The translations under genes were made by a program, and so were the position numbers. The notes beneath the pieces were generated by a model. That model searched no databases. It had not been told where the DNA came from and saw nothing but the letters and a program-made list of their open reading frames with translations. Below, piece by piece: positions 1 to 50,800 of a stretch of DNA of 64,000 nucleotides; position 1 is the stretch's first letter, and every line of letters begins with the position of its first letter. This DNA comes from Ophelia neglecta (lineage: Eukaryota), in contig OZ260661.1 of assembly GCA_965285935.1 (NCBI GenBank), positions 20,584,001 to 20,648,000 of the forward strand, in the 5' to 3' direction.

Positions 1-861
1 ATTATCATTGTCGTTATCTTTGGTAGTGAACTTCATGCCGTTGGCGTACTTCATGGAATCCGAAGCAGTGGTAGAGGCGGTATTGTAGCCAGACACGCTC
101 AGCTTATATTTTGTATCTTCCCCAGCCACACTAAAGTGGGAATACTCGGCATACTTCTTATCCCCATTCCAGGCTGTTAGATCTACACGGAGCTTATAGC
201 CCCCTTTTCCGGTAAGTTGATGGAGTTTCTCTAAACCCAGCCAGAAATTTCCCCTGGGATCTCCAAATCCATTCCGGTAGTCGGTCCACCCTTTGTTGAA
301 GTCCACGCTGGAGTCCTGACGGTGAAGAAAGACGACGTCGGTGACGGGTATCAGTGTGAGTGTGGTGGCTTTAAACCCACGATAGTCGTTATAGGCGCTG
401 AACCACTTTATTCCACCATTGTTCGGCCCTGTTCCATAAAAACCTGTTAAATGTGCAAAGAAGCAGTTAGTGTACCACCAGCCAGCCTCCCAGGTACGGG
501 CACAGTTCCCACTCCACTGGTCGTTGTCCTTGTCGGGGGTGGAGAACTTGGCGCCGTTATGTTGTGTCAAACTATCTCCAGCTGTGGAGGAGGAGTCATA
601 CCCAGAAACAGAAATCTTATACATCTCGGTCTCACTGGCGACAGAAAACGTCGAGTAAAGGGCCCACTTCTTCTGTCCCGACCAATCAGTTAGATCCACT
701 CGGAGTTTGTAACGACCTTTGCTTGTCAATTCGTGTAGTTTCTCAAGACCAATCCATAAATCTCCATGAGGGTCACCAAAACCGACCTTATAGTCGACCC
801 ATTTTCGGTTGAAAGTTTGTCTCCCATCCTGGCGCCGCAGAGCGATAGTATTTGATGACGC
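1..861 (-). CDS. Tandem fibrinogen-related domain (2xFReD) protein, copy 1, main coding exon (3' end outside window)
   Basis: Acceptor tatttccag|GCG at 862/861. Hand translation is open for 287 codons: ASSNTIALRRQDGRQTFNRKWVDYKVGFGDPHGDLWIGLEKLH...DKDNDQWSGNCARTWEAGWWYTNC...GFGDPRGNFWLGLEKLH...FTTKDNDNDN. Colinear without net indel with 46760-47620. Probably absent from the ORF track because no stop lies inside the window. Confidence 0.9.
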
Positions 862-1727: not shown

Positions 1728-1889
1728 CTGCTTTCCTTGTAAATTTCGAATCTGCCCTCTAGATGTTTTGAGCAAGGAACCAGGTATGTTGTCGCTCAGT
1801 CCTGCTCGCTCATTTCTCTGCTCTTCGCAAGAAGTCTTACAGATCCATATTATCAATATGGCAATTTTCATGAAAGCCGACAGTGTCAT
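1728..1889 (-). CDS. Copy 1 first coding exon (signal peptide plus short linker, 54 aa)
   Basis: MTLSAFMKIAILIIWICKTSCEEQ...RNLQGKQ ends in consensus donor CAG|GTAAGT at 1728/1727. Phase 0 matches the phase-0 acceptor at 861. A pyrimidine-rich acceptor lies just upstream of the ATG. Confidence 0.75.
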
Positions 1890-23417: not shown

Positions 23418-23967
23418 TGGGACACTTACTTCCCTCTTACAGAGAGACAATCCTTAACCTTACCCCCTTCCTCATTATAAGGCACAAGCAACATGAAACA
23501 TGATCATTTTATCATCTTAAATGATAAATTAAAAAACAGTTTAGGTGCCAAATGAACTTTATTTCCCGAAGGAAAGTACACAAATAACCTTGAGGTAAGA
23601 TTGATACTGACTCGATGTTTTTCCGAAATTTCAGATCAGTCAAAGCCTTTACACAAAGAAGTAAAAGGAAATGGGAATTCTACATTTAATCAAATCGAAA
23701 AGGAATCCAATTCTTTTTCCATATGGTAAACGAGTTGAACAAATGCTTTGATGTGTATATTTAACAATATATATCTTTAGTAATGAGGAAGCTAATAATT
23801 GTATTTCGAAAGCTATTGGTTAAATTTACAGTTATACAGAGCAATTTGAGAATGTTTTAATTAAAATGGAAAAAGCGCATCCAGCCTTTTGGTGTTTAAG
23901 AGTGACTTTCAATCCACCCAAAAATTGATTATATCAATTAGATTATTAAAACGAGTGCTGTTGGAAT

Positions 23968-25010
23968 CTAAGCAGGCTGTACTGTGAGAGTCACAGCTTT
24001 TAATGCAGCGTGGTTATTATAAGCCCCATACCAAAACATGCCGTGTACGGATGTATATCCGTCGGGTTTGTACAGACCTGTAGGGTGGACCCAAGAGTCA
24101 CCATCATACCACCAACCTCCTGTAATTTCTTTGGCTATGTTTTCAGAGTGATCATCATTGTCGCGGTCTCGGGTGGAGAACATAGCGCCGTTAGCGTTCT
24201 TAAAGGAATCCGAAGTAGAGGTAGAGGCAGTTTTGTAGCCAAACACGGTCAGCCGTTATTTCAAATCTTCACCAGCCACACTAAAGTGGGAGTACTCGGC
24301 ATACTTCTTTTCCCCATTCCAGGCTGTTAGGTCTACACGGAGCTTAAAGCCCCCTTTGCCGGTGATTCGATGAAGTTTCTCTTACCCCAGCCAAAAGTTT
24401 GCCTTGGGATCTCCAAATCAATTCCGGTAGTCGGTCCACCCTTTGTTGAAGTCCATGCTGGAGTCCTGACGGTGAAAGAAGACGAATTCCGTGACGGGTA
24501 TCAGTGTGAGTGTGGTGGCTTTAAATCCACGATAGTCATTATAGGCGCTGTACCACTTTATTCCACCATCGTTCGGCCCTGTTCCATAAAGACCTGTTAA
24601 TTGTGCAAAGAAGCAGTTAGTGTACCACCAGCCAGCCTCCCAGGTACGGGCACAGTTCCCACTCCACTGGTCGTTGTCCTTGTCGGGGTGGATAACTTGG
24701 CGCCGTTATGGTGTGTCAAACTATCTCCAGCTGTGGAGTAGGAGTCATACCCGGAAACAGAAATCTTATACATCTCGGTCTCACTGGCGACAGAAAACGT
24801 CGAGTAAAGGGCCCACTTCTTCTCTCCCGACCAATCAGTTAGATCCACTCGGAGTTTGTACCGACCTTTGCTTGTCAATTCGTGTAGTTTCTCAAGACCA
24901 ATCCATAAATCTCCCTGAGGGTCACCAAAACCGACCTTATAGTCGACCCATTTTCGGTTGAATACTTGGGTCACATCCTGGCGCCTCAGAACGATAGTAT
25001 TTGATGACGC
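23968..25010 (-). pseudogene. Tandem FReD gene copy 2, pseudogene
   Basis: 1043 nt vs 1044 in copy 3. One-base deletion in the G-run at about 24685. In-frame stops at 24418-24420 (TGA), 24382-24384 (TAA) and 24256-24258 (TAA). Signal-peptide exon removed by a deletion joined at about 25157. Confidence 0.92.
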
Positions 25011-26849
25011 CTGGAAATATAATTAACTTCAGAAAAAATTCAGAAAACCCGACTCCACTGCCGTAAGGTGAAGCCATAAATCAACAGTTGGTCAGCTCAA
25101 TTCAAATGTTATTATACTATAAACAGCGCAATAAATCGCTATTTAGCAATTTGTGTCTATATTAGCTTTTGACTCACAGAACTATGAATGTCCTGGTCAT
25201 GTGATACCATCATCACGGGTGAATATAATTAGGGAGCTTATCAACTGTTTAATTACTGTTGAATTGACTAAGAAGATTAACAGCTGGCTTTGACTATGGC
25301 CAACGTTCCAAAATTGATTATATATTCTCGGGGCTAACGGAGACATACAATAATTTATGTGAAAATGACAGAGTATGTTATATAACAATCTTGGCAGAAG
25401 TTTGTTTTGATGCATTCACTAAAATACCATTTTAGATATAATTCAACCCGGGTTTCCAAAATGTTGAACTTAAATATTGTCAGTTTTTTATGATTATTAA
25501 GTAGAAAGCAAAGGGGGCACATGGATATACCAATTGTCGTGGGACAATTTCGGACAACGAAACAAAAGACACTAGGCATTAAGGAGTAAATATCAATTAA
25601 AATTCGTTTTAATTCAAAAGAGAAATTTAACCTTAAACAACGACCGAATATAAGTACATAGCAATAGTGTTTTTAAGGCGGCCATGCATTATATATATCC
25701 GGCCTGAGACAAATGATGATTACCATATTAAATCTTCATTCCCTAACTCAGTAGGAATACCAACCATAAGAAACAGCATTCGTATGAAATGGACAATTAA
25801 AAGTTAAAAAATGAAATATATAACAAATTTGCGAACCTTTTTTGTCTGTTTCACTGTCCAACTGTTTTAAATATCGCTCGTCAAAAATGGTGCAAGTATA
25901 AAGTAAATGACACCTACCTCTGATGTCGAATTGCCTTCAATAATGAGCACAGCACGATTCTAGACTTCGTCCTCTCTTAACTGAAGTTGTTCAGAGTGTG
26001 CATCCTGAGGCTAAAGAGAGTCACTATATAGCTGAAATAACACCTGACACTCAATGAAAGAGATATTTGATTAAAGGCATGATAGCTGAATTTAAATGTT
26101 ATGGAGCAGACATGACCAGACACAAACTGATTTGAATCATGATGAATTGCCGTTGCCTGATATTACTTGCAATGATGCTCACACGAGTATTAGTGGCAAA
26201 CACACGGCGTTGTCAGATCGGCTGCAATAGGATCAACGCTGTCAGATTGACGGTTCAAATGCTAGCTTCCAATTCCGGGTTTGGAAAGCGTGTAAATTGT
26301 ATGAAAGGAGACACAGCTGGTTTGGCCTGGTCTCCCGGTATAGTTAGGGTTTATATTCCTGAATGCCGCGGTAATACAAAACAAAAGTCTTTACTCATGT
26401 TTCTCAACAAAATATATTTGTAAATGACAGATATAAAATGAGCACCTAGCTGACCGGCCAGGTGCATGTGCAATACCAATTTTATTGTGGACCCGAAAAT
26501 CCTACCATATTCCATTGATATACTGAGAGCCACACTTAAATATATGTCATGGTGCTTATGGTTGACCCTGCGCTGCATGACCCGGACAAAGAAAAAGAGC
26601 TTCCTGGGCTTAATGTTACAAGGCTGTAATCTATAGTCTGTGTGTTTGATGCACGTGTGTCTTTCATGGCGACGCCTGAAGAAAGAAGGTGGCTAGATTC
26701 CCGCCATGTCTATATGCTAGTACATGTCTGTAAGTGAGGACAGCGCAACTCTGTAAAATACCGTCTTCTCAGTCTTCTGATGGGCCCTATGTGGCTTTAC
26801 TCACAAAAAGGCTTCATTATTGGTCGTTGTTTGGATGAACTAGTCGCTA

Positions 26850-27575
26850 AAGGACGCGTCCGTCGGACCTATATCATGATCGCTCAGCAATGCGTCAATC
26901 GGGCCTCTGTCATGAACACCAAGGGGCAAGTCCATGGGGATGCTATCATGACTTCTAAGCCACGCGACAATCTGGCCTCTATCATGATCACCGAGGGGCG
27001 TGTACATCAGGTCTCTATCAGCATCGCTAAGCGACGCGTCAATCGTACGGGCTCATCGGGCCTCTGTCCCGAACACCAATGGACGCGTCCATCGGGCTAT
27101 TATACTGATCACAGAGGGGCGTGTCCATCACGCCTCTATCCTAATCACAGAGGGGTGCGTACATCGGGCTTCTATCATGATCACCGAGGGGCGTGTACAT
27201 CAGGTCTCTATCAGCATCGCTAAGCGACGCGTCAATCGTACGGGTTCATCTGGCCTATGTCCCGAACACCAATGGACGCGTCCATCGGGCTATTATACTG
27301 ATTACAGAGGGGCGTGTCCATCACGCCTCTATCCTAATCACAGAGGGGTGCGTACATCGGGCTTCTATCATGATCACCGAGGGGCGTGTACATCAGGTCT
27401 CTATCAGCATCGCTAAGCGACGCGTCAATCGTACGGGTTCATCGGGCCTCTGTCCCGAACACCAATGGACGCGTTGATCTGGCTATTATACTGATCACAG
27501 AGGGGCGTGTCCATCACGCCTCTATCCTAATCACAGAGGGGTGCGTACATCGGGCTTCTATCATGATCGCTGAGG
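26850..27575. repeat. 36-bp family array containing a 193-bp higher-order unit repeated about 3 times
   Basis: The segment beginning gtgtacatcaggtctct recurs at 27000, 27193 and 27386. Confidence 0.88.
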
Positions 27576-36384: not shown

Positions 36385-38830
36385 TATCGTGGACACCCAC
36401 TACATTCTAACAGAGACTTACCCTACTGGGGACACCAACTACACACTAACTGAGAGACTAACCCTACTGGGGACACCCACTACATTCTAACAGAGAGACT
36501 AACCCTACTGGGGACACCAACTACACTCTAACTGAGAGACTAACCCTACTGGGGACACCCACTACATTCTAACAAGGAGACTAACCCTACTGGGGACACC
36601 CACTACATTCTAACAGAGAGACTAACCCTACTGGCGACACCCACTACATTCTAACAGAGAGACTAACCCACCTGGGGACACCAACTACACACTAACAGAG
36701 AGACTAACCCTACTGGGGACACCCACTACATTCTAACAAGGAGACTAACCCTACTGGGGACACCCACTACATTCTAACAAGGAGACTAACCCTACTGGGG
36801 ACACCCACTACATTCTAACAGAGAGACTAACCCTACTGGGGACACCCACTACATTCTAACAGAGAGACTAACCCTACTGGGGACACCAACTACACTCTAA
36901 CTGAGAGACTAACCCTACTGGGGACACCCACTACATTCTAACAGAGAGACTAACCCTACTGGGGACACCCACTACATTCTAACAGAGAGACTAACCCTAC
37001 TGGGGACACCCACTACATTCTAACAGAGAGACTAACCCTACTGGGGACACCCACTACATTCTAACAGAGAGACTAACCCTACTGGGGACACCCACTACAC
37101 TCTAACTGAGAGACTAACCTTACTGGGGACACCCACTACATTCTAACAGAGAGACTAACCCTACTGGGGACACCCACTACATTCTAACAGAGAGACTAAC
37201 CCTACTGGGGACACCCACTACATTCTAACAGAGAGACTAACCCTACTGGGGACACCAACTACATTCTAACAAGGAGACTAACCCTACTGGGGACACCCAC
37301 TACATTCTAACAGAGAGACTAACCCTACTGGTGACACCCACTACATTCTAACAAGGAGACTAACCCTACTGGGGACACCCACTACATTCTAACAGAGAGA
37401 CTAACCCTACTGGGGACACCCACTACATTCTAACAGAGAGACTAACCCTACTGGGGACACCCACTACATTCTAACAGAGAGACTAACCCTACTGGGGACA
37501 CCCACTACATTCTAACAGAGAGACTAACCCTACTGGGGACACCCACTACATTCTAACAAGGAGACTAACCCTACTGGGGACACCCACTACATTCTAACAG
37601 AGAGACTAACCCTACTGGGGACACCAACTACACACTAACAGAGAGACTCACCCTACTGGGGACACCCACTACATTCTAACAGAGAGACTAACCCTACTGG
37701 GGACACCCACTACATTCTAACAGAGAGACTAACCCTACTGGTGACACCCACTACATTCTAACAGAGAGACTAACCCTACTGGGGACACCCACTACATTCT
37801 AACAGAGAGACTAACCCTACTGGGGACACCCACTACATTCTAACAAGGAGACTAACCCTACTGGGGACACCCACTACATTCTAACAAGGAGACTAACCCT
37901 ACTGGGGACACCCACTACATTCTAACAGAGAGACTAACCCTACTGGGGACACCAACTACACACTAACAGAGAGACTAACCCTACTGGTGACACCCACTAC
38001 ATTCTAACAAGGAGACTAACCCTACTGGGGACACCCACTACATTCTAACAGAGAGACTAACCCTACTGGGGACACCCACTACATTCTAACAAGGAGACTA
38101 ACCCTACTGGGGACACCCACTACATTCTAACAGAGAGACTAACCCTACTGGGGACACCCACTACATTCTAACAGAGAGACTAACCCTACTGGGGACACCC
38201 ACTACATTCTAACAGAGAGACTAACCCTACTGGGGACACCCACTACATTCTAACAAGGAGACTAACCCTACTGGGGACACCCACTACATTCTAACAGAGA
38301 GACTAACCCTACTGGGGACACCCACTACATTCTAACAGAGAGACTAACCCTACTGGGGACACCCACTACATTCTAACAAGGAGACTAACCCTACTGGGGA
38401 CACCCACTACATTCTAACAGAGAGACTAACCCTACTGGGGACACCCACTACATTCTAACAAGGAGACTAACCCTACTGGGGACACCCACTACATTCTAAC
38501 AAGGAGACTAACCCTACTGGGGACACCAACTACATTCTAACAGAGAGACTAACCCTACTGGGGACACCCACTACATTCTAACAAGGAGACTAACCCTACT
38601 GGGGACACCCACTACATTCTAACAAGGAGACTAACCCTACTGGGGACACCAACTACACTCTAAAAGAGAGACTGGCCCAACCATGGACACCTAAAACACG
38701 CTTACAGAGAGACTTGTCCAACCATGGACACCTCAAACACTCTTACAGAGATACTTGTCCAACCATGGACGCCTGAAACACTCTTACAGAGAAACTTGTC
38801 CAACCATGGACACCTAAAACACTCTTACAG
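36385..38830. repeat. 41-bp minisatellite, inverted and expanded copy (about 55 core units)
   Basis: Unit CATTCTAACA(GA/AG)GAGACTAACCCTACTGGGGACACCCACTA. Confidence 0.97.
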
Positions 38831-38884
38831 AGATACTTGCTCTACCGGAGACATCCATTTACGAGAGACTGTCCTTCACCGGGT

Positions 38885-39545
38885 CGGGGACTGCCGAAAT
38901 TCCGACCGACCATTGGTCCGACGAGCCATTGGTCTTAAGGCCTATTGGTCCGACGGCCCATTGGTCCGAAGAGCCATTGGGCCGAATTTCCGACGGCCCA
39001 TTGGTCCGACGGCCTATTGGTCCGACGGCCCATTGGTCCTACGAGCCATTGGTCCGACGGCCCAGTGGTCCGACGACCCATTGGTCCGACGGCCCATTAG
39101 TCCGACGACCCATTGGTCCGACGGCCCATTGGTCCGACGACCCATTAGTCCGACGGCCTATTGGTCCGACGACCCATTGGACCGACGGCCTATTGGTCCG
39201 ACGACCCATTGGACCGACGGCCTATTGGCCCCGTCTTATTGGTGATGTTTAGTCTCGGCAGTTCGGACCTGTGAGGTACAGTTGCAGGAAATATAGTTTC
39301 TCGATACTTAACTAAATTCTATTTACAAAACATGACACACAGTTTCTCCAATTAATCCGAAAATGTACATTTTTTTTTGACTAAACATCACCCAGGTGGT
39401 AAGACAATTAACAATAAAAAAGACGTGAAATAGGACGAATAGGCCGTCGGACCAATGGGTCGTCGGACTAACGGGCCGTCGGACTAATGGGTCGTCGGAC
39501 TAATGGGTCGTCGGACCAATGGGCCTTGGGACCAATGGATCCTAC
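38885..39545. mobile_element. Foldback/MITE-like 16-bp array element, inverted duplicate of 8125-8735
   Basis: Same arms and spacer in reverse complement, with slightly different unit number. Confidence 0.65.
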
Positions 39546-39865
39546 TGCTTATGCTGTGGAGTTGCAGTCTCAAATGGAAGATGGTAGGAGGCAAATTTCA
39601 ACTATTGAACGAGAAATAGGGCAGAATTGCATAGCATTAGAGAGATCAATGCAGATAAATGTCAGAAGTATTACAGCCACTACAAGATAGAACCACATCC
39701 AGTAACAACCATGCCAGAGGTATCTTCGTCTTCGTATTTATCGCCCCTTTTGACATGGCAGTCGCCTTCACTTGGTGTAGACAATTCAGGGCATAATCAG
39801 CTTTCATTTCCAACTATGGCTCATTCCACCTTACCAAGTCAGGCAAATGGGTATACACAGTCGCC

Positions 39866-41110
39866 GCCGAAGCGCTGTGAAAATAGACGGAAAATTATCC
39901 AAATGGTTACTGTCCAACAAGTCCTTCACCAAGGAGGGAAGCTGTCACTGATGCTTTTTGTATTCTTCTACAATGAACTGTTTGAGAGGCTGACAACCTG
40001 TGCAGGAAACAGAATATTCCCAGAAAGTCCCTGCTTATTACATGGCATTGATGTCACAAGCCCTGGGTATGCGGACGACATTCCCTTAATGTCGGTAACC
40101 ATACAACCAAATGCAGAAACTTTGCAATATTGCTCTGGAATTCAGCCGGAAGTGGTGACTGGATATCAATGCATCTAAATGTGACATATTGAGATTCGGT
40201 AATGCCAACGAAGAAAGGAGCACTAAGATAATGATCGCGAAAGAATTAATCACTGAGACATCATCTGCAACGCACCTCGGCGTCACTTTGACTTCGACCT
40301 CACAGCACATGACGGTGGCCATTAAGGATCGGGCAACTAAAGCAAGGAGACTAGTGAACGCCCTGGGCGTTGGTATATCGTTTGGTAAAATCAACACCAA
40401 GACACTCGGTCAGCTCTACTGGACAGTCGTAGTACCGGGATTCTTATATGGACTTGAACTCCTGAATCTGAATAGGCAGCAGATGGAGATAGCAGAGTCG
40501 GTACATCAGGAAATAGCCAGTAGATTCCAAGGACTTGGGACTCAGACCCCCAACCCTGCAACGTTAGTCACCAACGGCTGGGGATCAATCAGGCAGTATC
40601 TAGACCATAAATGCTTCAACTTATGAGGAACATTCTTGAGCTTCCGAGTACAAATATCTACAAGAGAATGATCAAAGGCGTTACCTCTATAACTGAAGTC
40701 TCTGGAGAGTATAGCGGCGATAGTCCAGTAGGGGTCCTGCTGGATACCTTCAAAAAATACAACCTGTAGCGCACACTCTTCTCATGGGTTCAAAGCGGAG
40801 AAGTCCCGCCAAAACTGCAATGGAGAAAACACTCACGGTAAGTTACATGGAAGTAAAAGGAGCAGAAATGGGCCATCGAATGTACGACTCAGTTTCTGGT
40901 AAGGGAAATGGCAGTGATTTTCCGAGAATTAGTTGATTCAGATACAAAACGTCCCTGTGCTAGAATTTTGAATAGCGCTTCATACTCGCCATATGTAAGA
41001 CATAGTATTCCGCAATGTATTAATACCAAATACAGTAAAAGGAATCCTGGACAGCAGTAAATATACGCCCTCTCGAACCCTGGTGCGACAATAACATGTT
41101 TATACTCGAT
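39866..41110 (+). mobile_element. 5'-truncated LINE fragment, inverted duplicate of 6330-7797 with a further internal deletion
   Basis: QGGKLSLMLF, YADDI, YWTVVVPGFLYGLELL. Deletion junction at about 40889. Confidence 0.85.
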
Positions 41111-42944
41111 TAATACTATTTGATTATATTGTTCATTTCATTTCGAATGTATAACCCCTTTTGCCAAGTGTGCTTTAGTTTATGTTCACTTACCTGATTT
41201 CTTTTTGTTCCCTATTACATTTCCCATCTTGTAAGCTCTTCAGAAAGTCGAGGTAAATAAAAAAAAAGCGCTCTACAGAAAGCTCTCTCACTATGTAGAC
41301 GACACCTATATCAAGAAGGCTCTTTAGACTCTCTAAAAGGCACAACCTCAACTTGACATTATTTTTATCAGCTGTCAGGTCTGTCAATTAATTGTGAGCA
41401 ATTGGATAAAGGTATTCATAGTATATATTCCTAATACCTATGTGCATTTATGAACTAGGGCAGTAAGATAGGATTCTTAATGTGATTTGTCTGCATGGCG
41501 TCCACTCTTTTCTTAAAGCTTTTAAACATCTGGCTTTCCACGCATCCACTCTACCGATTGAGCTAAGGGGCGGATCCCTCTGGCCAATCTAGTAGGGGCG
41601 CTGTGACCATGCTCCAGGGCCCATGATCAGTCACACATATCCCTGTGACATAGGTTGGGTCGAATGAGTTCTGTTCTCGATGTTTAAATCACAACGATGT
41701 GATGGTAGGCAAGCTGCCCCTCCTGTTTGAAAAAGGAAAACTGGTTTTTACATTGTACATAATAGCTCAGTTGGCACAGGTTAAACTACAATTACTTATA
41801 TTGACAACAAAAACTCATATTTGGCAGCAGGATGCTGTTTGGGGGCGGATGAATTCGTCTTTGCTTAAACTTGTAAAATAAGGCGTCAGAGAGAAGCCTG
41901 AAAATAATGCTGACGAGCTACTAGGTTCGTAGGGGCTTTATATTTCAGTGAATTGATGAGGCGAAATTTTCTTGTCGGGATGGCCTGAACTTTACTTCAC
42001 AAGTGTATGAATAGTATGTTGAATATTACATTCCCGCTTATCATTACCACTGCAATACGTTCAGCCTTGTTTACCATATACACCAGCCAAAAATTACCCG
42101 CCATAGCAGATGTCACTAAACGAGATCAGCAAATTTAAACTGAATTATTCACGTTTACTTATTGATTTGTAATTCACGCCTAGTGTAGAGTTCGATTTCA
42201 AACTTTTATAATTTCGCAATGTATGATATTTTGATGAAGGGTATTTCCATGCATATTATCGATCTGTTTGTCGGACTATATACTGGAATATTCTATCAAC
42301 TAAAATATAGAATTCTGTCGAAGCAAGTTGCTTTTTCATTTGATATCATTTGCAGACGATCGAACGATTGATCGATTCTACAGCCCACATATGAGTAATT
42401 GGATACATGCACAACATTCGTGATGGTATCAACAACGGATCTGAATATTTAATGTCAAAGAGAAAGAGCCTTTTATATTATTATTGTCGAAGCATTTTCG
42501 TTGCACACTCGAGTCGTGGGAACCTATTGGTACTTTCCGAGACACAAATAATCAAAAGTAGAAACTGACATTTTATGTTTCGAAGATATAAAGTTGAGTG
42601 AAGTATTTAAAACGAAGTTATGATTACCAATTGTATAGACATGTTGGCCTTAGAATTCATAATTCATTCATCCCCAACCTGCTCAAGAGTGTGGCGGGTG
42701 GGTTTGGTGGGTCGGGGGAGGATGGAGGAAGGGGGAGGGTGCTTCGGTCTAGGCTGTGTCGATCCTTCCAGCTCCATTTCTCCGTGCATCTCTTTTAACC
42801 GCATTTTGTCCATTGTATTTAACAAATACCTTTTCATATTTGGCTTTCAGATGTGGTGTGAACCTTTTATGGTTGCTCCGATGGTATATATTTTTTTAAG
42901 TAAATCCGAAAAACAATTTGTCTGTCCTGTGATGCAGCCCTAGA

Positions 42945-43700
42945 CCCGCACGATTGACGCGTAGCGATGCCGATAAAGACCTGATGGACACTACCCTCGG
43001 TGATCATGAAAGAGGCCCAATTGACGCGTCGCTCAGCGATCATGATAGAGGCCTCATGAACGTGCGCCTCGGTGATCATGATAAATGCCCGATTGACGCG
43101 TCGCCCCATCGACGCGTCCCTTGGTGATCAGTTTAGAGGCCCGATGGAACCGAACTATTGACGCGTCGCTCAGCGATCATGATAGAGGCCTCATAAACGT
43201 GTGCCTCGGTGATCATGATAGAGGCCCAATTGACGCGTCGTTCAGCGATCATGATAGAGGCCTTATGAACGTGCCCCTCGGTGATCATGATAGAGGCTCG
43301 ATTGACGCGTCGCTCAGCGATCATGAAAGAGGCCTCATGGACGTGCCCCTCGGTGATCACGATAGATGCCCGATTTGACGCGTCTCTTAGGTATGCTGAT
43401 AGAGACCTGATGGTCACGCCCCTCGGTGATCAGGATAGAGGCCCGATGAACGTGCTCCTCGGTGATCATGATAAAGGCCCGTTGAGCGTGCCCCTCGGTG
43501 ATCATGATAGAGGCCCGATTGACGCATTGCTCAGCGATCACGATAGAAGGCCCATAGACGTGCCCCTCGGTGATCAGAATAGAGGCCCGATTTGACGATG
43601 CTGATAGAGACCTGATGGACACGCCCCTCGATTATCTTGATAGAGGCCCGATTGACGCGTCGCTCAGCGATCATGATAGAGGTCAGACGGACGCGTCCTT
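42945..43700. repeat. 36-bp CpG-rich tandem repeat, inverted array
   Basis: Reverse-complement units GATCATGATAGAGGCCCGAT... Confidence 0.9.
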
Positions 43701-44627
43701 AAGCGACTAGCTCATCAAACTACGACCCATCAGGGAGCCTTTTTGTGAGTGGAGCTACAGCCACATAGGGCCCATCAGAAGACTGGGAGGTCGGTATTTT
43801 ACAGAGTTGTGTTGTCCTCACTTGCAGACATGTACTAGCATATAGATATGGCGGGAATCTAGCCGCCTTCTTTCTTCAGACGTCGCCATGAAAGACAGAC
43901 GTGCATCAAACACACAGACTATAGATTACAGCCTTGTAACATTAAGCCCAGGAAGGTCATTTTATTTTTGTGGGTTATGCAGCGCAGGGTCAACCATAAG
44001 CACCAATACATTTCCAAAGTGTGGCTATCAGTATATCGATGGAATTTTCGGGTCCACAATGAAATTGTAATTGCACATGCACCTGGCAGGCCAGCAAGGA
44101 GCTCATTTTATATTTTTAATTAAGTAATATATCTTGTCGAGAGACATGGTTAAACACTTTTGCTTTTGTATTTGCGCGGCATTCAGGAATATAAACCCTT
44201 ACCATACCGCGGGCCAGACCATAGCCAGCTGTGTTTCCCTTCATACAATTTAGACGCTCTCCAAACCAGAGTCATATATTGATATTAATATATGTATTTA
44301 TTTTGATAGTATCATCATATGAACAGACCGGACTGATCTCGAAGCCAGCATTTGAACCGTCAGTCTGACTGCGTTGTTTATATCGCAGCCGATATGACAA
44401 CGCCATGTGTTTGCCACTTATAATCGTGTTTGCATCATTGCAAGTAATATCAGGCAACGGCAATTCATCATGATTCAAATCAGTTTGTGTCTGGTCATGT
44501 CTGCTCCATAACATTTAAATTCAGCTATCATACCTTTAATCAAATATCTCTTTCATTGAGTGTCAGGTGTTATTTCAGCTATATAGTGACTCTCTTTAGC
44601 CTCAGGATACACACTCTTAACAACTTC

Positions 44628-44692
44628 AGTTAAGAGAGGACGAAGTCTAGAATCGTGCTGTGCTCATTATTGAAGGCAATTCGACATCAGAG
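44628..44692 (+). promoter_or_regulatory. Candidate transcription start / non-coding first exon of FReD copy 3
   Basis: TCAGTT at 44626-44631 and donor AG|GTAGGT at 44692/44693. The acceptor ttttatag at 45724 before the ATG implies an upstream exon exists. Confidence 0.3.
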
Positions 44693-45735
44693 GTAGGTGT
44701 CATTTGCTTTATACTTGCACCCTTTTTGACGAGCGATATTTAAAACAGTTCGACAGTGAAACTGACAAGAAAGGGTCGCACATTTGTTATATATTTCATC
44801 TTTTAACTTTTAATTGTCCATTTCATACGAATGCTGTTTCTTATGGTTGGTATTTTCTTCTGAGTTAGGGAATGAAGATTTAATATGGTAATCATCATTT
44901 GTCTCAGGCCGGAAATATATAAAGCATTGCCGCTTTTAAAAAACCATTGCTATGTACTTATATTCGGTCGTTGTTTTAGGTTAAATTTCTCATTTGAATT
45001 AAAACGAATTTTAATTGATATTAACTCCTTAATGCCCAGTGTCTTTTGTTTCGTTGTCCGAAATTGTCCCATGACAATTGGTATATCCATGTGCCCCCTT
45101 TGCTTTCTACTTAATAATCATAAAAAAACTGACAATATTTAAGTTCAACATTTTGGAAAACTGGGTTGACGTATATCTAAAATGGTATTTTACTGAATGC
45201 ATCAAAACATACTTCTGCCAAGATTGTTATATAACATACTCATTTTCACATAAATTATTGTATGTCTCTGTTAGCCCCGGGAATATATAATCATTTTTGG
45301 AAAGTTGGCCCTGGTCAAAGCCAGCTGCTACTCTTCTTGGTCAATTCAACAGTTATTAAACAGTTGATAAGCTCGCTAATTATATTCACCCGTGATGATG
45401 GTATCACATGACCAGGACATTCAATGTTCTGTGAGTCAAAAGCTAATATAGGCATTTAAGCATATTTCTTCCTAAGTTACCTACCTGCCTGCTTACTTAT
45501 TTACATTTTCATACATTCCCAATTACTTGCTTACTTACTTACTTATTTACTCCCTTTTTTGCTTACTTACAAACTTGCTGACTTAATTTCTATCAAATTC
45601 TTCCCTTTCTTTTACAGCCAATTGAAATATGACACCTACCTGATTCCTAGCTTGCTTACTTACTTACCTATTAACTGTCTTAATTGCTTACTTACATACT
45701 TGCTAACTTTATGTTCTTTTATAGCCAACTGAAAT

Positions 45736-45897
45736 ATGACACTCTTGGCTTTCATGAAAATTGCCATATTTACAATATGGATCTGTAAAACTTCTTGCGA
45801 AGAGCAGAGAAATGAGCGAGCAGGACTGAACGACAACCTACATGATTCCTTGCTGAAAACATCTGGGGGGCGAATTCGAAATTTACAAGGAAAGCAG
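45736..45897 (+). CDS. Copy 3 first coding exon (signal peptide plus linker, 54 aa)
   Basis: MTLLAFMKIAIFTIWICKTSCEEQ...RNLQGKQ with donor CAG|GTAAAT at 45897/45898, phase 0. Frame conserved with copy 1. Confidence 0.75.
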
Positions 45898-46759
45898 GTA
45901 AATATAATCTGCGTAATTGTTCTGGCCATCGTCGTCTTTCTTCAGTTTTAAAATGGTAACAACGATGCCATCATTTGCCATATCTTAAACCCGGTTTGCT
46001 ATCACATGGTGCTACGTAGGGTACAGCAATTATGTTTTGGCTGTCAAAATACTAGCTTTGTTAATTTTTTTTGGTCAAATTTCTTGATGTTGATGGTATA
46101 CCATTCCTTTACGGCATTTTATACATAAAAGATCTACTGGCCATAAAATATGACACTTACAGGGTGACACGACCATATTGTTCTTCTGGTATATATACAT
46201 ATGCGCGCTAAAGCAGCTACATCTAGTATTTCCCCCCATTATATTCCGGTCTTTGTTAGATGTGTCAATAATGTCTTGGATAATATACTCTTTCAGTTCC
46301 TCTGTGTTTATTAATGAAATACCACTTTAATGTAGGAACGTGGGTATGCATTTGAGGAAATTTGGTCTTTCAAAAAAATTGTTTATTCTGGGCCTGTTTC
46401 TGTATCTTGTATTGCTCTAAAATGTGTCAATAAACACTATTTTAGCAATCGAAAGTCAAAAGTGCGACTCGATTTGAAGCAAGTTCTTTATTAAGCGAAA
46501 GCCAGAAGTCTTACATCAATACAATGTCACACACTTGAATCTATATCAGCTGTTTGGTTAATTCGAGTATCCATCAGTATATATTTTCGATGTTTTCTAA
46601 ATATAAACTAAACGACACAAATTGCTGGAGAAGCGATTTATCCCACTGTTCATAATATAATAACATTTTAATTGGGCTGACTAGTTGTTGGTTTATGGAT
46701 TCACCTAACGTCAGTGGAGTCGGGGTTTATGAATTTTTTCTAATTCTAATTATTTCCAG

Positions 46760-47803
46760 GCGTCATCCAATACTATCGCTCTGCGACGCCAGGATGGAAG
46801 AGAAACATTCAACCGAAAATGGGTCGACTATAAGGTCGGTTTTGGTGACCCACAGGGAGATATATGGATTGGTCTCGAGAAACTACACGAATTGACAAGC
46901 AAAGGTCGGTACAAACTCCGAGTGGATCTAACTGATTGGTCGGGAGAGAAGAAGTGGGCCCTTTACTCGACGTTTTCTGTCGCAAGTGAGACCGAGATGT
47001 ATAAGGTCTCTGTTTCTGGGTATGACTCCTCCTCCACAGCTGGAGATAGTTTGACACAACATAACGGCGCCAAGTTCTCCACCCCCGACAAGGACAACGA
47101 CCAGTGGAGTGGGAACTGTGCCCGTACCTGGGAGGCTGGCTGGTGGTACACTAACTGCTTCTTTGCACATTTAACAGGTTTTTATGGAACAGGGCCGAAC
47201 AATGGTGGAATAAAGTGGTACAGCGCCTATAACGACTATCGTGGGTTTAAAGCCACCACACTCACACTGATACCCGTCACCGACGTCGTCTTCCTTCACC
47301 GTCAGGACTCCAGCGTGGACTTCAACAAAGGGTGGACCGACTACCGGAATGGATTTGGAGATCCCAAGGGAAATTTCTGGCTGGGGTTAGAGAAACTCCA
47401 TCAACTTACCGGAAAAGGGGGCTATAAGCTCCGTGTAGATCTTACAGCCTTTAATGGGGACAAGAAGTATGCCGAGTACTCCCACTTTAGTGTGGCTGGT
47501 GAAGATACAAAATATAAGCTGAGCGTGTCTGGCTACAATACTGCCTCTACCACTACTTCAGATTCAATGAAGGACGCCAACGGCATGAAGTTCACCACCA
47601 AAGATAACGACAATGATAATTACATATTTAACATTGCCATCGGACAAACAGGAGGTTGGTGGTATAAAACTACGCCCCGGGCCCACCCTACAGGTGTGTA
47701 CCAACCCGACGGATATAGCAAGCTGGACTGCATGTATTGGTATGGGGCTTATGATAACAGCGGTTCATTAAAGGCTGTGACTCTTACAGTACAGCCTGCT
47801 TAG
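46760..47803 (+). CDS. Tandem fibrinogen-related domain (2xFReD; ficolin/FREP/tachylectin-5-like) protein, copy 3, intact main exon
   Basis: Acceptor ttccag|GCG, then 347 codons plus TAG, in frame with ORF 46892-47803. Two sets of FBG motifs: RxDxxxxFxxxWxDYxxGFGD, WxGLEKLH, LRVDL, FST/FTTxDxDND, GWWY. Confidence 0.95.
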   Translation, partial: ASSNTIALRRQDGRETFNRKWVDYKVGFGDPQGDIWIGLEKLHELTSKGRYKLRVDLTDWSGEKKWALYSTFSVASETEMYKVSVSGYDSSSTAGDSLTQHNGAKFSTPDKDNDQWSGNCARTWEAGWWYTNCFFAHLTGFYGTGPNNGGIKWYSAYNDYRGFKATTLTLIPVTDVVFLHRQDSSVDFNKGWTDYRNGFGDPKGNFWLGLEKLHQLTGKGGYKLRVDLTAFNGDKKYAEYSHFSVAGEDTKYKLSVSGYNTASTTTSDSMKDANGMKFTTKDNDNDNYIFNIAIGQTGGWWYKTTPRAHPTGVYQPDGYSKLDCMYWYGAYDNSGSLKAVTLTVQPA

Positions 47804-47839
47804 AATCCAGCAGCACTCGTTTTATAACCTGATTGCTGT

Positions 47840-47861
47840 AATAAATTTCAGGATGAAATAA
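47840..47861 (+). terminator. Candidate polyadenylation signals for copy 3
   Basis: AATAAA at 47840 and about 47857, within 60 nt after the stop. Further AATAAA at about 48167 and 48279. Confidence 0.3.
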
Positions 47862-50800
47862 AAGTGACGCTGAAGCCTAAAAACGCTTGTTGCATATTTT
47901 GTCTTTTTTCCATTTTAACTAAAACTTGCTCCTATTGCTCTGTATAACTATAAAAATCAATCCATTAGCTTTCGCAATATAATTATCAACTTCCTCATTA
48001 TCATTAAAGATATATATTGTCAAACGTGAACCTTAAAGATGGATATTTTTGCCGGAAAACCGTGTAACATTGATAAACGTGTTTCTAAAACATCACTATT
48101 CTCTAGGTCAAAGCTTTTGTTCAACTCGTTCACCATAGGAAATAGAATTGGATGCCTTTTCTATTAAATAAAATCTACCCTTAACCTCTTAATAAAAAGG
48201 TTTTGACTCTGAAAGGCTGCTTACACACAGAGTCGGATAAAATCTTGCCTCCGGATTATTTCTGCACTTCCCTCATTGAAATAAAGTTGAATTTCCACCT
48301 AACCAGTTTTTTTTATTTATCATTTAAGACGCAAAAAATGGTCATGTTCGTGTTGATTGTGCCTTAAAATGAGGAAGGGGGAAGGTTAACAGCCAAGGAT
48401 TGTCTTTCTGTAAAAGGGAAGTAAGTGTCCCAAGTAGGGTCATTCTCATTGAGAATGTACCTACTACGAGTAGGGGTCCCTGGTTGGGGTAGCCTCTCGG
48501 TTAGAGTGTCGTGGTTTGGTTGATTATTTGATAGTGACCTGATGTCGGGACTTGTGATTCGATAGGGTTTGTAAGTCCATGGTAACACAAGCTGAAACAC
48601 ATTTAATAATACCGTCCGGGTACAATCGAAGGCCAATCAAGGCTTGGAAAAGGGAAAGGACGGTCTATGCAATCTAACAATGAGATCAAATGTCTTAACT
48701 TGTTCCAGCCCACCTGTGTGAGTAATGCGAGTAGTGAATGGACATGTGCATGACAAAATATAAGATGAAAAATTAAACAAATAAAACCACAAATATCTGT
48801 TTTCTATTTAATACATTACTTGACAATATTCCATGTGACAATCGACCTATTTCGAATTACATTTCTCTTAAAATATCATTCCTTTCTTCAAATTATTCAT
48901 CTACTTTTGTCTAATAGATTATATACATAATAGCCACTGGGTGTTTTTCTATCTCCATACACTGATTGTGGATTTTTGCCGCTTAGCCTCCGCTAAGCCT
49001 GCGCCTACCCGCCGCAACCGAATCCCTTTGTAGACATTTGGTGTCATTCCACCCAGACATGTAAAATACCTACGCGGCAGCCTAGCCTCCACATCTCCGA
49101 ATTGATTAATAGCCTATTTTCTTAAGCCATCTATTGTTTGCTATGGAACAGGCTTCTGCGGAAAATTATTTCAGAATCACCGGTCATCAATTTTGGCTTG
49201 TCTGGTCTCGGAATTAAACATAGCAAATAGAACCTCATTACTATTACTCTTTTACAACCAGAAATTGCTGAATCTGACGTGGACGGAATGCAAATTGCAG
49301 TAGTAGTGTAATGACCATAATGGCCTGTCGAAATGTATCAATTCATAACCGAAGTAGTATCCCAAATATTATAAATTATTGAAACTATAATCTGATCGTA
49401 AAAAAAAACATGGCATTTATTTATTTAAGTCCAAGTTCGAAATACACATCTTTAATAACAACCATGAACCACCAAGAATAGAGTAATTTATGACAAAGTA
49501 ATACCATGAATTATCTTGTCATGATTCCGGTTCCGTTATTGAACGATCCATTAAGTGGCCATGCATTATTGAAAAAGGCTTTCAGCATGTCCTTTCAATA
49601 ACTTTTGGTTACAATAGTACTGGTATTGTCGTAACAATGATATTTAATAAAAATCAAATATATAAGGGAATGATTTTCTTTGACATTGCCCTAGCAATTC
49701 CATTTAATGATCAAACTAAACAATTGCTAAGATGCATATAGTCCTGAGCTTCAAGCAAAATTGTAAGCAAATACCGCTAGGAGAAGACCAGAAATTAATA
49801 GACAGAGTCTGGCGGAGTAAGCAATTACCGATCTATTCTGTGCTCACACGGGTAACCACTGAGAGTGGGTGTCCGGCTGACCGAGCGAAAATCATAAATT
49901 AAGAAGAGTCTATTTACATCACCAGGAACCACATGCTGCAAGCTAGCAACTATCATCTCCCTGTTGCCTAACTGAAAATATGGTTGTAACTAAGTTACAC
50001 TTTTAAGCAAAATTGCTATTCACGCTCTTAAACAATTGTTCGAACTTAATTCATGTCTAGGGGACCCATAAGTTTGTTATCCACCTATATTAGGTCAAGC
50101 TTGACATGTAGTTTCAACACTCATTCCATCATATCAAGTTGAATTACTTTCCAACATGAACTTATGGATGTACCAACCACACCTAATGGTTTCCCTCAGT
50201 GGCGGGTAATGGGAGTAAGACCTGGTTCGAGGAGATGTAGACATTCAATAATGTTTATACTCGCAACATGACACTTGCCAACACCTATCTGGTAAAATTT
50301 AGTTGCGACAAACATTTTAGCGCTTTATTTTCCTTTTGGGATTAATATGGAAACTAATATTGACATTTAAATGAAGATCTCTTGTGGTGGTTGGCGTAGC
50401 AATCATTATATAATGATTTGTCAGCCCATTTTTTGGCTTATTAATCCCCAAGAACGAGGCAATTTGATGATTAAGTTTAATTTACAGGCTCACTTGGTAT
50501 TTCTTCTGGTCATTATCTCACTGGTAGTACGGAGTAAGCAGTCTTTCGGTGGATATATGAACAGTTAATGTACCCCTTGGAGCCAATAATCCAGAAACTT
50601 GTAAAAAGGAATGCTATATATATTAATAGCCAGGGCGGCTTTTAGACGGACTCATCGATTAGGATGATGACTGTATGAGTGGCAGGGTGGAAAATCTGGA
50701 TAGACCATTAACGATCTGGGACTGCTCAATAGAAAAGTGGGCAATTATAATTAAATATTGTTTGAAAAACGGATCTTCTATTTCATTGAGATGGCATTTT

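What the first reader, a model, noticed from the sequence alone, without database searches (positions are those of the whole stretch)
45736..47803. Secreted lectin-like protein made of two A-subdomain-less fibrinogen domains on one exon
Seen: signal peptide, a linker of about 33 aa, then two FReDs fused head-to-tail (TIALRRQDG...TLTLIP / VTDVVFLHRQDS...TVQPA) on one 1044-bp exon. Each domain starts at the equivalent of the W-x-V-x-QRR strand. There is no DC...SGVY...CDM-x-T-x-GGGW segment and no collagen, coiled-coil or IgSF region. Established: ficolins, tachylectin-5 and gastropod FREPs have complete FBG domains and gain avidity by oligomerising. Inference: this family may use an internal B/P-B/P tandem instead, giving a bivalent or bispecific recognition molecule. 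Multi-FBG proteins are known in invertebrates, so novelty is unproven.
Basis: partly seen in the sequence, partly recalled or inferred. Interest (0 to 1): 0.75.

Follow-up and report, generated by a model that had tools for sequence, protein, structure and literature searches.

The report
Two-headed fibrinogen-type lectin gene
This invertebrate gene appears to encode a small secreted protein made of two sugar-binding fibrinogen-type heads that both lack the usual first subdomain, one head kept constant and the other highly variable between gene copies, which is an unusual build of a well-known immune lectin family.

Summary
Exon 2 (46760-47803) is one open frame of 347 codons with two Fibrinogen_C matches. 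Each covers Pfam profile positions 44-220 of 221 (E 1.7e-47 and 5.4e-46), so both lack the A-subdomain. An A-subdomain profile finds nothing in any frame of the 64-kb window, while a control gene scores 8e-22.

Exon 1 (45736-45897) encodes a signal-like peptide. It is kept in two neighbouring copies and in a paralog with about 58% identity in exon 2. AlphaFold2 of the exon-2 product gives pLDDT 93.7 and pTM 0.75, and its best structural match is M-ficolin (Z 28.8).

The design is neither a fluke nor unique:
- About 96 of 150 scored FReD exons in this 762-Mb genome start at the same point.
- Tandem, coiled-coil and five-repeat mucin-like versions exist in this genome.
- A-less tandems occur in other animals, all uncharacterised.

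Domain 1 is nearly identical between copies. The last 61 codons of domain 2 have lost the pocket disulfide and evolve at dN/dS 1.06-1.63, against 0.11-0.28 upstream.

No RNA data exist, so splicing, expression and sugar binding are untested. Two other first-stage notes on this window (s1-747441, s1-747477) touch the same genes. Verdict: a new variant of a known lectin kind, of moderate interest.

The parts
45736..45897 (+). Exon 1: start codon, signal-peptide-like N-terminus (hydrophobic stretch IAIFTIWIC) and a polar linker, 54 codons, ending at a GT donor in phase 0.
   Evidence: The ATG, open frame and GT donor are kept in copies C and D. A homologous exon (37% identity over 43 aa, E 9e-6) lies about 400 bp upstream of the tandem exon in paralog L040. 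No signal-peptide predictor was available.
45898..46759 (+). Intron (862 bp, GT...AG) with no FReD coding piece.
   Evidence: No A-subdomain hit. The three intron ORFs scanned have no Pfam family. It is 91% identical to the intron of copy C, close to the synonymous divergence of the exons. The splice itself is not shown by RNA.
46760..47803 (+). Exon 2: 347 codons plus TAG, encoding both FReD cores with a junction of about 3 residues (TLTLIP/VTD).
   Evidence: AlphaFold2 gives pLDDT 93.7 and pTM 0.75. Foldseek and VIA rank ficolin, ANGPTL and tenascin FBG domains first.
46760..47278 (+). Domain 1: A-less FReD core that keeps the D-x-D-x-D calcium motif and the Cys-Cys pair of the P-subdomain. 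It is nearly invariant between copies.
   Evidence: Pfam profile 44-220, E 1.7e-47. D110, D112 and D114 are invariant and C120 and C133 nearly invariant in alignment A2. dN/dS is 0.18 for A against C. Its last 61 codons differ at 1 of 61 residues between A and C.
47279..47800 (+). Domain 2: A-less FReD core fused directly to domain 1. The calcium motif is kept and both P-subdomain cysteines are lost.
   Evidence: Pfam profile 44-220, E 5.4e-46. Sequence. Its first 114 codons have dN/dS 0.12.
47618..47800 (+). Hypervariable tail of domain 2 (last 61 codons, P-subdomain loops). Three variable patches sit on an invariant framework (TGGWWY, H-x-TG-x-Y, DGY, WYGAY, LKA-x-TLTVQ).
   Evidence: dN/dS is 1.06-1.63 here against 0.11-0.28 in the 82 codons before, for the six pairs among A, C, D and L012. 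Fisher p is 0.002-0.03, but dN/dS is not significantly above 1. Of 61 positions, 29 are invariant and 19 carry 3 or more residues in 5 copies.
47840..47845 (+). AATAAA polyadenylation-type signal 37 bases after the stop codon.
   Evidence: Motif scan, sequence. It is a consensus match only.
1..861 (-). Copy C, exon 2, which runs off the window start (whole in L002). It is an intact paralog, 91% identical in protein.
1728..1889 (-). Copy C, exon 1 (open frame, GTAAGT donor).
   Evidence: Coordinates are converted from L002 3408-3569.
23971..25010 (-). Copy B: a dead copy with a frameshift near 24687, three stop codons in domain 2 and no counterpart of the 45455-46613 segment that holds exon 1.

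Best explanation
The locus is a real two-exon gene of a spiralian-like invertebrate. It encodes a small secreted protein that is little more than two fibrinogen-related (FReD) lectin heads in one chain. Each head has the B and P subdomains only.

Shown:
- The exact truncation point of both heads.
- The absence of any A-subdomain coding in 64 kb.
- Conservation of the exon layout in paralogs.
- Purifying selection on most of the frame.
- A confident FReD fold for both heads.

Inferred: the protein is exported through the exon-1 signal peptide. Each head binds a ligand in its calcium-dependent P-subdomain pocket, as ficolins and tachylectin-5 do. Because it lacks the A-subdomain and any collagen or coiled-coil neck, it probably gains cross-linking power from the built-in tandem and not from oligomerising.

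Head 1 is held constant, with its pocket disulfide kept. Head 2 has lost that disulfide and its three pocket loops differ strongly between gene copies. The cluster would therefore supply a set of adaptors with one fixed and one diversified binding site, acting as agglutinins or opsonins or as bridges between a common partner and varied targets.
For: Architecture: Pfam profile 44-220 for both domains. No A-subdomain in the whole window, with a working positive control.

Gene model:
- The exon-1 ATG, frame and GT donor are kept in copies A, C and D.
- A homologous signal-like exon sits upstream of the tandem exon in a paralog whose exon 2 is about 58% identical.
- An acceptor lies 4-5 codons before the first core strand in A, B, C, L005, L006 and L011.

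Constraint: dN/dS is 0.18 for domain 1 and 0.12 for the first 114 codons of domain 2, against an intron identity of 91%.

Age: in a tree of 62 cores, the first domains of all tandem paralogs form one clade (SH-aLRT 97). The second domains of L040 and L005-L009 form another (96). So the tandem predates the spread to three chromosomal sites.

Fold: pLDDT 93.7 and pTM 0.75. M-ficolin gives Z 28.8, and L-ficolin gives 173 aligned residues at rmsd 1.5.

An A-less body can fold alone: the solved alphaEC chain 1fzd (201 residues) aligns from its residue 11 to query residue 8, with Z 27.3.

Constant versus variable heads.
Against: No RNA evidence exists. The three public runs that hold the stretch come from one sample of one study. 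They cover intron and exon alike and show no joints, so they are DNA. Splicing and expression are therefore unproven.

Exon 1 is no better conserved between A and C than the intron is. This is my hand count of about 14 of 162 differences, against 91% intron identity.

The signal peptide was judged by eye only.

Two to three of the five neighbouring copies are dead or damaged. The cluster is in birth-and-death turnover, and copy A could be a recent silent copy.

dN/dS in the domain-2 tail is not significantly above 1, so relaxed constraint on a decaying pocket is not excluded. The lost disulfide is nearly invariant in the family.

No ligand, calcium dependence or valency was tested. I could not inspect the model's coordinates, so the interface between the heads is inferred from pTM and from aligned ranges only.
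Confidence: 0.6

Rival explanations
1. The gene is real, but only head 1 works. Domain 2 is a decaying or purely structural pseudo-lectin domain. Its loss of the pocket disulfide and dN/dS near 1 would reflect relaxed constraint, so the protein is functionally monovalent.
For: Both P-subdomain cysteines, nearly invariant in alignment A2, are gone from domain 2 in all copies of this cluster. Tail dN/dS of 1.06-1.63 is not significantly above 1. pLDDT dips to 81-87 in that part.
Against: Of the 61 tail positions, 29 are invariant in five copies, and the variable ones fall in three patches between conserved framework motifs. That pattern does not fit uniform decay. The first 114 codons of domain 2 are under strong constraint (dN/dS 0.12). 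The D-x-D-x-D motif is kept. The reading frame is open in A and C.
Confidence: 0.2
2. Copy A is an unexpressed or recently silenced member of a birth-and-death cluster. It would be an intact-looking frame without present function.
For: Copy B is dead: frameshift, three stops and no exon 1. Copy D has a TAA and a changed acceptor. L012 is a fragment. No RNA run holds the stretch. Retroelement debris lies between the copies.
Against: A and C both keep 401 codons open across two exons with intact splice signals. They differ with dN/dS 0.12-0.18 over 287 codons. More distant intact tandem paralogs exist at C5 (5 copies) and at C1:134.67 Mb.
Confidence: 0.12
3. The gene model is incomplete. Exon 2 would be joined in vivo to exons outside the stretch examined, supplying an A-subdomain, a coiled coil or other domains, and exon 1 would not be its true 5' end.
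For: Splicing is unverified. A polypyrimidine-AG (ttttatag) lies 11 bases before the ATG and is conserved in the copies, so at least a 5' UTR exon upstream is possible. Other A-less FReDs here do carry coiled-coil-like necks.
Against: No A-subdomain coding is found anywhere in the 64-kb window, within 1.5 kb of 30 related loci, or within about 8 kb upstream in 3 other clusters. Exon 1 starts with ATG plus a signal-like peptide and is homologous in a distant paralog. Domain 2 cannot receive an A-subdomain in any case, because it is fused in frame to domain 1.
Confidence: 0.08

Closest known systems
Ficolins, tachylectin-5A and FIBCD1 (complete FBG-domain lectins with solved structures)
   Same: Same fold for the B and P parts. 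M-ficolin 2wnp gives Z 28.8, L-ficolin 4r9t gives 173 aligned at rmsd 1.5, and TL5A 1jc9 gives Z 27.5. Identity is 35-42%. The calcium motif is kept, and head 1 keeps the pocket disulfide.
   Different: Those proteins have the A-subdomain and reach avidity through collagen stalks, N-terminal cysteines or tetramers. Here the A-subdomain and any neck are absent, two cores are fused in one chain, and head 2 lacks the disulfide.
Multi-FBG FREPs annotated in Anopheles gambiae and Drosophila (PMC1242226, PMC2429915; passages read)
   Same: Proteins with two or three FBG domains, 'most of them not full FBG domains', one of them with a hinge of about 20 aa.
   Different: Those truncations were mostly 3' and were partly put down to misannotation. 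No regular loss of the A-subdomain, no head-to-tail fusion and no constant or variable heads were described. In my sample, most multi-core proteins keep A-subdomains: 296 A+ against 49 A- cores, and 12 of 91 multi-core proteins have none. Their supplementary files were not seen.
Uncharacterised A-less tandem FReD proteins of other animals
   Same: Examples are P0187 (S. purpuratus 'mucin-22-like', XP_011664009.1), P0126 (Macrostomum lignano), P0199 (JGI), P0195 (Logan) and P0001, P0133 and P0134 (ENA). Their Fibrinogen_C matches start at profile 40-54, and they carry two or three cores per chain. P0199 and P0195 are head-to-tail like the window gene. P0001 is 50% identical.
   Different: They have other partners: Thr-rich mucin spacers, PAN-like spacers, or EGF plus trefoil domains. 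In the tree each one's domains pair with each other, so the duplications are independent. None has a described function.
Human fibrinogen alphaEC domain as crystallised (PDB 1fzd)
   Same: The solved chain of 201 residues begins about where exon 2 begins: chain residue 11 aligns to query residue 8. It superposes at Z 27.3 and rmsd 1.5 over 170 residues. This shows that a B+P body is stable on its own.
   Different: As I recall, unchecked because the paper is not held, that body arose by accidental proteolysis of a complete domain. Here the loss is encoded in the gene.
Tandem-repeat galectins (functional analogy only)
   Same: Two carbohydrate-recognition domains in one secreted chain, which allows cross-linking and two specificities (PMC8878817, passages read).
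   Different: An unrelated fold. There the two domains are joined by a linker, whereas here the junction is about 3 residues.
Coiled-coil FReD proteins of spiralians (FreDC2; PMC9835746 and PMC8878817, passages read)
   Same: Secreted FReD lectins from the same broad animal group. This genome also has A-less singles with coiled-coil-like necks (L031, L032, L035, L038).
   Different: The window gene has no neck, and the published descriptions do not mention loss of the A-subdomain.

Membership tests
Fibrinogen-related domain (Pfam PF00147 Fibrinogen_C) | Profile match above the curated cut-off (22 bits) | tested here: met
   307.4 bits for exon 2. Separately, 162.5 bits for domain 1 and 157.6 bits for domain 2.
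Fibrinogen-related domain (Pfam PF00147 Fibrinogen_C) | Complete three-part domain A + B + P. The A part is a helix plus two strands with a disulfide, called the most conserved part in PMC5928061. | tested here: not met
   Both matches start at profile position 44. No A-subdomain is found in any frame of the window, with a positive control at 8e-22.
Fibrinogen-related domain (Pfam PF00147 Fibrinogen_C) | FReD fold of the B and P subdomains | tested here: met
   The AF2 model has pLDDT 93.7. Foldseek gives E 1e-19 with TM 0.75 to the target. VIA gives Z 26-29 to ficolins, tenascins, angiopoietins and fibrinogen. This is a predicted structure, not a solved one.
Calcium-dependent FReD lectins (ficolin / tachylectin-5 type) | Asp-rich calcium site in the P-subdomain | tested here: met
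   D110, D112 and D114 are invariant in the 60-sequence alignment. Domain 2 has DNDND at the matching place. This is sequence evidence only, with no metal binding tested.
Calcium-dependent FReD lectins (ficolin / tachylectin-5 type) | Disulfide that braces the ligand pocket | tested here: inconclusive
   Domain 1 keeps C120 and C133, which are nearly invariant columns. Domain 2 has lost both in every copy of this cluster.
Calcium-dependent FReD lectins (ficolin / tachylectin-5 type) | Binding of acetylated sugars or other glycans | not testable with these tools
   Needs recombinant protein and glycan arrays.
Ficolins | Collagen-like stalk N-terminal to the FBG domain | tested here: not met
   No Pfam family in exon 1 or in the three intron ORFs scanned. 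No Gly-X-Y run appears in the 54-aa exon 1.
Gastropod FREPs | One or two IgSF domains N-terminal to a single FBG domain (as described in PMC8878817) | tested here: not met
   No Ig family in exon 1, in the three intron ORFs scanned or in exon 2. There are two FReD cores, not one.
Secreted protein | Cleavable N-terminal signal peptide and no membrane anchor | tested here: inconclusive
   A hydrophobic N-terminus is seen by eye, and it is homologous to a more canonical one in L040. The chain ends right after the last strand. No predictor was available.

The most novel reading that the evidence does not exclude
FReD cores without the A-subdomain, cut cleanly at Pfam position about 44, would be an unrecognised but widespread subtype of the fibrinogen-related domain. 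In this genome it has become the main form and has been rebuilt into three avidity designs: necked singles, head-to-tail doubles and a five-head mucin-like chain. The doubles of this cluster would then be germline-diversified bispecific lectins, with one invariant head that docks to a fixed partner and one head whose three pocket loops are under diversifying selection. That amounts to a small constant-plus-variable recognition system.
Probability: 0.3. Interest if true: 0.65.

Novelty: new variant of a known kind. Interest (0 to 1): 0.5.

Why it matters
FReD lectins are among the main expanded recognition families of invertebrate immunity. Their avidity is normally explained by oligomerising necks.

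This locus suggests a different solution. The domain is stripped of its most conserved subdomain and duplicated in one chain, with one conserved and one hypervariable binding site.

If confirmed, it would give three things:
- A compact natural scaffold of about 350 residues for two-site glycan recognition.
- A clear test case for how germline diversification is focused on pocket loops.
- A reason to stop discarding 'truncated FBG domains' as annotation errors in genome surveys.

It also shows that the A-subdomain is dispensable for the fold in nature, not only in the proteolysed alphaEC crystal.

Tried and rejected
Expression test. The look-up of sequencing runs found three runs, all from one sample of one study and none recorded as RNA. 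Laid on 44300-48400, they covered 29-30 of 30 bins, intron included, with no joints. They are DNA and say nothing on splicing.

Close relatives. Domain 1 alone found only 16 proteins at E<=1e-20 among 36 candidates, none above 47% identity and only one named ('hypothetical protein'). The whole exon found nothing above 50%.

First rule for calling A-subdomains. My rule was too strict. It wrongly called Elysia (P0124, P0131) and Physella (P0193) proteins A-less, although their sequences show C-D...GGGW. I replaced it with a full-length profile, and I do not use the labels.

Organism. An intronless HSP70 (L041) had its best full-length named matches in bivalves at 77-79%, in the annelid Owenia at 77% and in insects at 76%. 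The top rows by score were long fused models from pig and plants. So it is a spiralian-like invertebrate with the phylum unresolved. Earlier agents' guesses of annelid or mollusc are neither confirmed nor refuted.

Literature. Searches found multi-FBG and 'truncated FBG' listings but no description of a regular A-less class or of constant and variable heads.

alphaEC paper. I could not reach it. Its account of proteolytic removal is recalled only.

Positive selection. Pairwise counts do not show dN/dS significantly above 1. I did not run site models.

Rejected idea.

Joined product. The joined exon-1 plus exon-2 product was left out on purpose. All searches and the fold used the exons separately.

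Second structure job. I did not use it.
Full report
**What is there**

The region holds a two-exon gene on the + strand.
- Exon 1 (45736-45897) is an ATG followed by 53 codons. It reads MTLLAFMKIAIFTIWICKTSC, then a polar stretch, and ends at a GTAAAT donor in phase 0.
- The intron (45898-46759) ends in ttccag.
- Exon 2 (46760-47803) is a single open frame of 347 codons plus TAG. An AATAAA lies 37 bases after the stop.

Pfam finds Fibrinogen_C at 8.5e-92 with two stretches. Scanned separately, domain 1 (46760-47278) scores 1.7e-47 and domain 2 (47279-47800) scores 5.4e-46. Each covers profile positions 44-220 of 221. Exon 1, three intron ORFs and one ORF just upstream of exon 1 have no Pfam family at E<=1. 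The joined 401-residue product was not built, searched or folded.

**Is the A-subdomain really missing?**

I built a 56-position profile of the A-subdomain from 33 complete FReDs among the first hits.
- It finds nothing below E 0.36 in 560 six-frame pieces of 38000-48500.
- It finds nothing at E<=1 in 3449 pieces of the whole window.
- It finds nothing at E<0.01 within 1.5 kb of 30 related loci.
- As a control, it scores 8.1e-22 on a complete FReD gene of the same genome (L036) and 7.6e-6 on L037. Pfam reads L036 as profile 2-220.

Domain 2 cannot have an A-subdomain in any case, because it follows domain 1 in frame after about three residues (TLTLIP/VTD). In 56 solved FReD chains, domain 1 aligns only from chain residue about 44-56 onward.

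**Gene model without RNA**

The only public runs holding this DNA are three runs of one sample from one study. They cover intron and exons alike and show no joints, so they are DNA and expression is untested. The indirect evidence is as follows.
- The window holds three copies: A (this gene), C (1-861 on the minus strand, running off the window, whole in L002) and B (23971-25010, minus strand). Further copies D (L003) and a fragment (L012) lie just outside.
- The exon-1 ATG, frame and GT donor are kept in A, C and D.
- A paralog on the same chromosome 114 Mb away (L040/L011, about 58% identical in exon 2) has a homologous first exon. It is 37% identical over 43 residues (E 9e-6) and starts MTFPALLKMAILMAFLCAVSG. 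It lies about 400 bp upstream of that paralog's tandem exon.
- An acceptor lies 4-5 codons before the first core strand in A, B, C, L005, L006 and L011.
- Between A and C, dN/dS is 0.18 in domain 1 and 0.12 in the first 114 codons of domain 2. The intron is 91% identical.

Against this, exon 1 itself is no better conserved than the intron, by my hand count. Copy B is dead: it has a frameshift and three stops and lacks the segment with exon 1. Copy D has a TAA and a changed acceptor.

**Fold**

AlphaFold2 on the exon-2 product, with a 60-sequence alignment, gives mean pLDDT 93.7 and pTM 0.75, and no segment falls below 50.
- Foldseek ranks ANGPTL2, M-ficolin and L-ficolin FBG domains first (E about 1e-19, target TM 0.72-0.77).
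- VIA-align gives Z 28.8 to M-ficolin 2wnp, Z 28.7 to L-ficolin 4r9t (173 residues, rmsd 1.5, model 173-347) and Z 27.5 to tachylectin-5A.
- When whole FBG chains are aligned, about 189 residues match over model range 43-347, against about 173 for one domain alone. This hints that part of domain 1 lies where the A-subdomain would lie relative to domain 2. I could not inspect coordinates, so this stays a hint.
- A B+P body can stand alone. The solved alphaEC chain 1fzd (201 residues) aligns from its residue 11 to query residue 8, at Z 27.3 and rmsd 1.5. My recollection that this body arose by proteolysis during crystallisation is unchecked.

PMC5928061 (passages read) defines A as a helix plus two strands with a disulfide. 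It calls A the most conserved part of the domain and says P is the part involved in functional interactions.

**The two heads differ**

Domain 1 keeps the Asp-x-Asp-x-Asp motif and the two cysteines that are invariant or nearly invariant in the family alignment. Domain 2 keeps the Asp motif but has lost both cysteines in every copy of this cluster. Paralogs at other sites keep them in their second domain.

The last 61 codons of domain 2 (47618-47800) behave differently from the rest:
- dN/dS is 1.06-1.63 in the six pairs among A, C, D and L012, against 0.11-0.28 in the 82 codons before. Synonymous divergence is similar in both parts.
- The contrast is significant (Fisher p 0.002-0.03), but dN/dS is not significantly above 1.
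- Of the 61 positions, 29 are invariant in five copies and 19 carry three or more residues. The variable ones fall in three patches between fixed framework motifs.
- The same stretch of domain 1 differs at 1 of 61 positions between A and C, against 20 of 61 in domain 2.

This confirms the other first-stage note on 47560-47803 (s1-747441).

**How common is the design?**

In this genome (762 Mb, 223 contigs):
- The exon-2 protein finds 119 matches at E<=1e-20, with 117 of 312 candidates scored.
- The Pfam profile finds 150 scored matches of 316 candidates. By my hand count of that table, 27 start at profile position 5 or lower, 27 at 16-32 and 96 at 34-45.
- In three further clusters, no A-subdomain lies within about 8 kb upstream of the core exon.
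- A-less cores occur here in four settings: singles whose exon continues upstream into a conserved coiled-coil-like neck (L031, L032, L035, L038), head-to-tail doubles at three sites, a 1247-codon open frame with five cores separated by Thr/Ser/Pro-rich spacers (L039), and beside ordinary complete FReDs.

In a tree of 62 cores (quick IQ-TREE, SH-aLRT support):
- The first domains of all tandem paralogs and the five L039 repeats form one clade (97).
- The second domains of L040 and L005-L009 form another (96).
- The window's second domain sits on a long branch within the same A-less clade of 28 rows (98).
- Complete FReDs fall elsewhere.

Outside this genome:
- A full-length profile was run on 285 fetched FReD proteins. 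It labels 296 cores A+, 49 A- (plus 20 at a protein's N-end), 23 unclear and 34 fragments.
- Of 91 multi-core proteins, 12 have no A-subdomain. Four of these 12 belong to one cluster.
- They include a sea-urchin RefSeq model named mucin-22-like, a Macrostomum protein and unnamed contigs.
- One of them, P0199, reads as signal peptide, two head-to-tail A-less cores, two EGF and trefoil domains.
- Each one's domains pair with each other in the tree, so the duplications are independent.

**Organism**

An intronless HSP70 gave its best full-length named matches in bivalves (77-79%) and in the annelid Owenia (77%). The organism is a spiralian-like invertebrate, and its phylum remains open.

**Comparison with the known**

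Ficolins, tachylectin-5A, FIBCD1, tenascins and angiopoietins share the B/P fold but have the A-subdomain and other means of oligomerising.

Multi-FBG proteins, many with truncated domains, were listed for Anopheles. That paper describes 2- and 3-FBG proteins, 'most of them not full', some put down to misannotation (PMC1242226, passages read). Similar listings exist for Drosophila (PMC2429915, passages read).

Spiralian FReDs with coiled-coil necks are described in PMC8878817 and PMC9835746 (passages read).

My five literature searches found no description of a regular A-less class, of head-to-tail A-less doubles, or of a constant and a variable head. The library is incomplete and supplements were closed.

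**Verdict**

The gene is probably functional, although its cluster also contains dead copies.

The most likely mechanism is a secreted, single-chain, two-site calcium-dependent lectin with one fixed and one diversified pocket. Everything beyond fold and constraint is inference. It is a new variant of a well-known lectin kind, and I score its interest at about 0.5.

Noticed in passing
L039 4537-8277 (G000:C5:26520537-26524277): One open frame of 1247 codons holds five A-less FReD cores (Pfam 5 stretches, profile 44-218). They are separated by Thr/Ser/Pro-rich mucin-like spacers of about 50-85 residues. Its repeats group with the first domains of the tandem genes in the tree.
   Followed up: partly
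L031, L035, L032, L038 (G000:C12:56.1-56.6 Mb, C9:28.86 Mb, C7:76.86 Mb): Single A-less FReD genes whose core exon continues upstream into a conserved coiled-coil-like segment with a cysteine (for example ...SQIEQLSQRADVCIR...). The A-less core is therefore also combined with a neck in this genome.
   Followed up: partly
window 23971-25010 (-) and L003/L004: Dead copy B and stop-bearing copy D share almost the same domain-2 tail (dN 0.05) while differing elsewhere. This points to exchange or recent duplication between copies and fits the other first-stage note on 23480-25010.
   Followed up: partly
window 14325-16136 (-) and 39627-40626 (+): ORFs with the same retroelement-like protein (shared stretch MRFGNANEERS...LGQLYWTVVVPGFLYGLELL) lie between the FReD copies. 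I did not scan them against families.
   Followed up: no
window 11811-12287, 26780-27416 and 38724-39245 (+): Long ORFs made of short peptide repeats (ITEGRVH.../RRVNRASIMI... and GPLVRRAIGP...), probably translated satellite or tandem-repeat DNA.
   Followed up: no
window 45526-45742: A segment of about 110 bases that includes the polypyrimidine-AG and the sequence just before the start codon is duplicated in tandem (45526-45635 and 45651-45742, 73% identical). It has a counterpart near copy C (1908-2080).
   Followed up: no
P0199 (JGI contig of 1888 bases; cluster of 4): A 582-residue protein reads as signal peptide, two head-to-tail A-less FReD cores, two EGF and trefoil domains. The contig is barely longer than its coding length, which suggests a transcript, so such tandems may be expressed in some eukaryote.
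   Followed up: partly
window 44300-48400, runs X1-X3: Summed contig depth is roughly two to five times higher over exon 2 than over the intron, as expected if reads from paralogs pile up there. Several single-base differences from the window were seen in those contigs.
   Followed up: no
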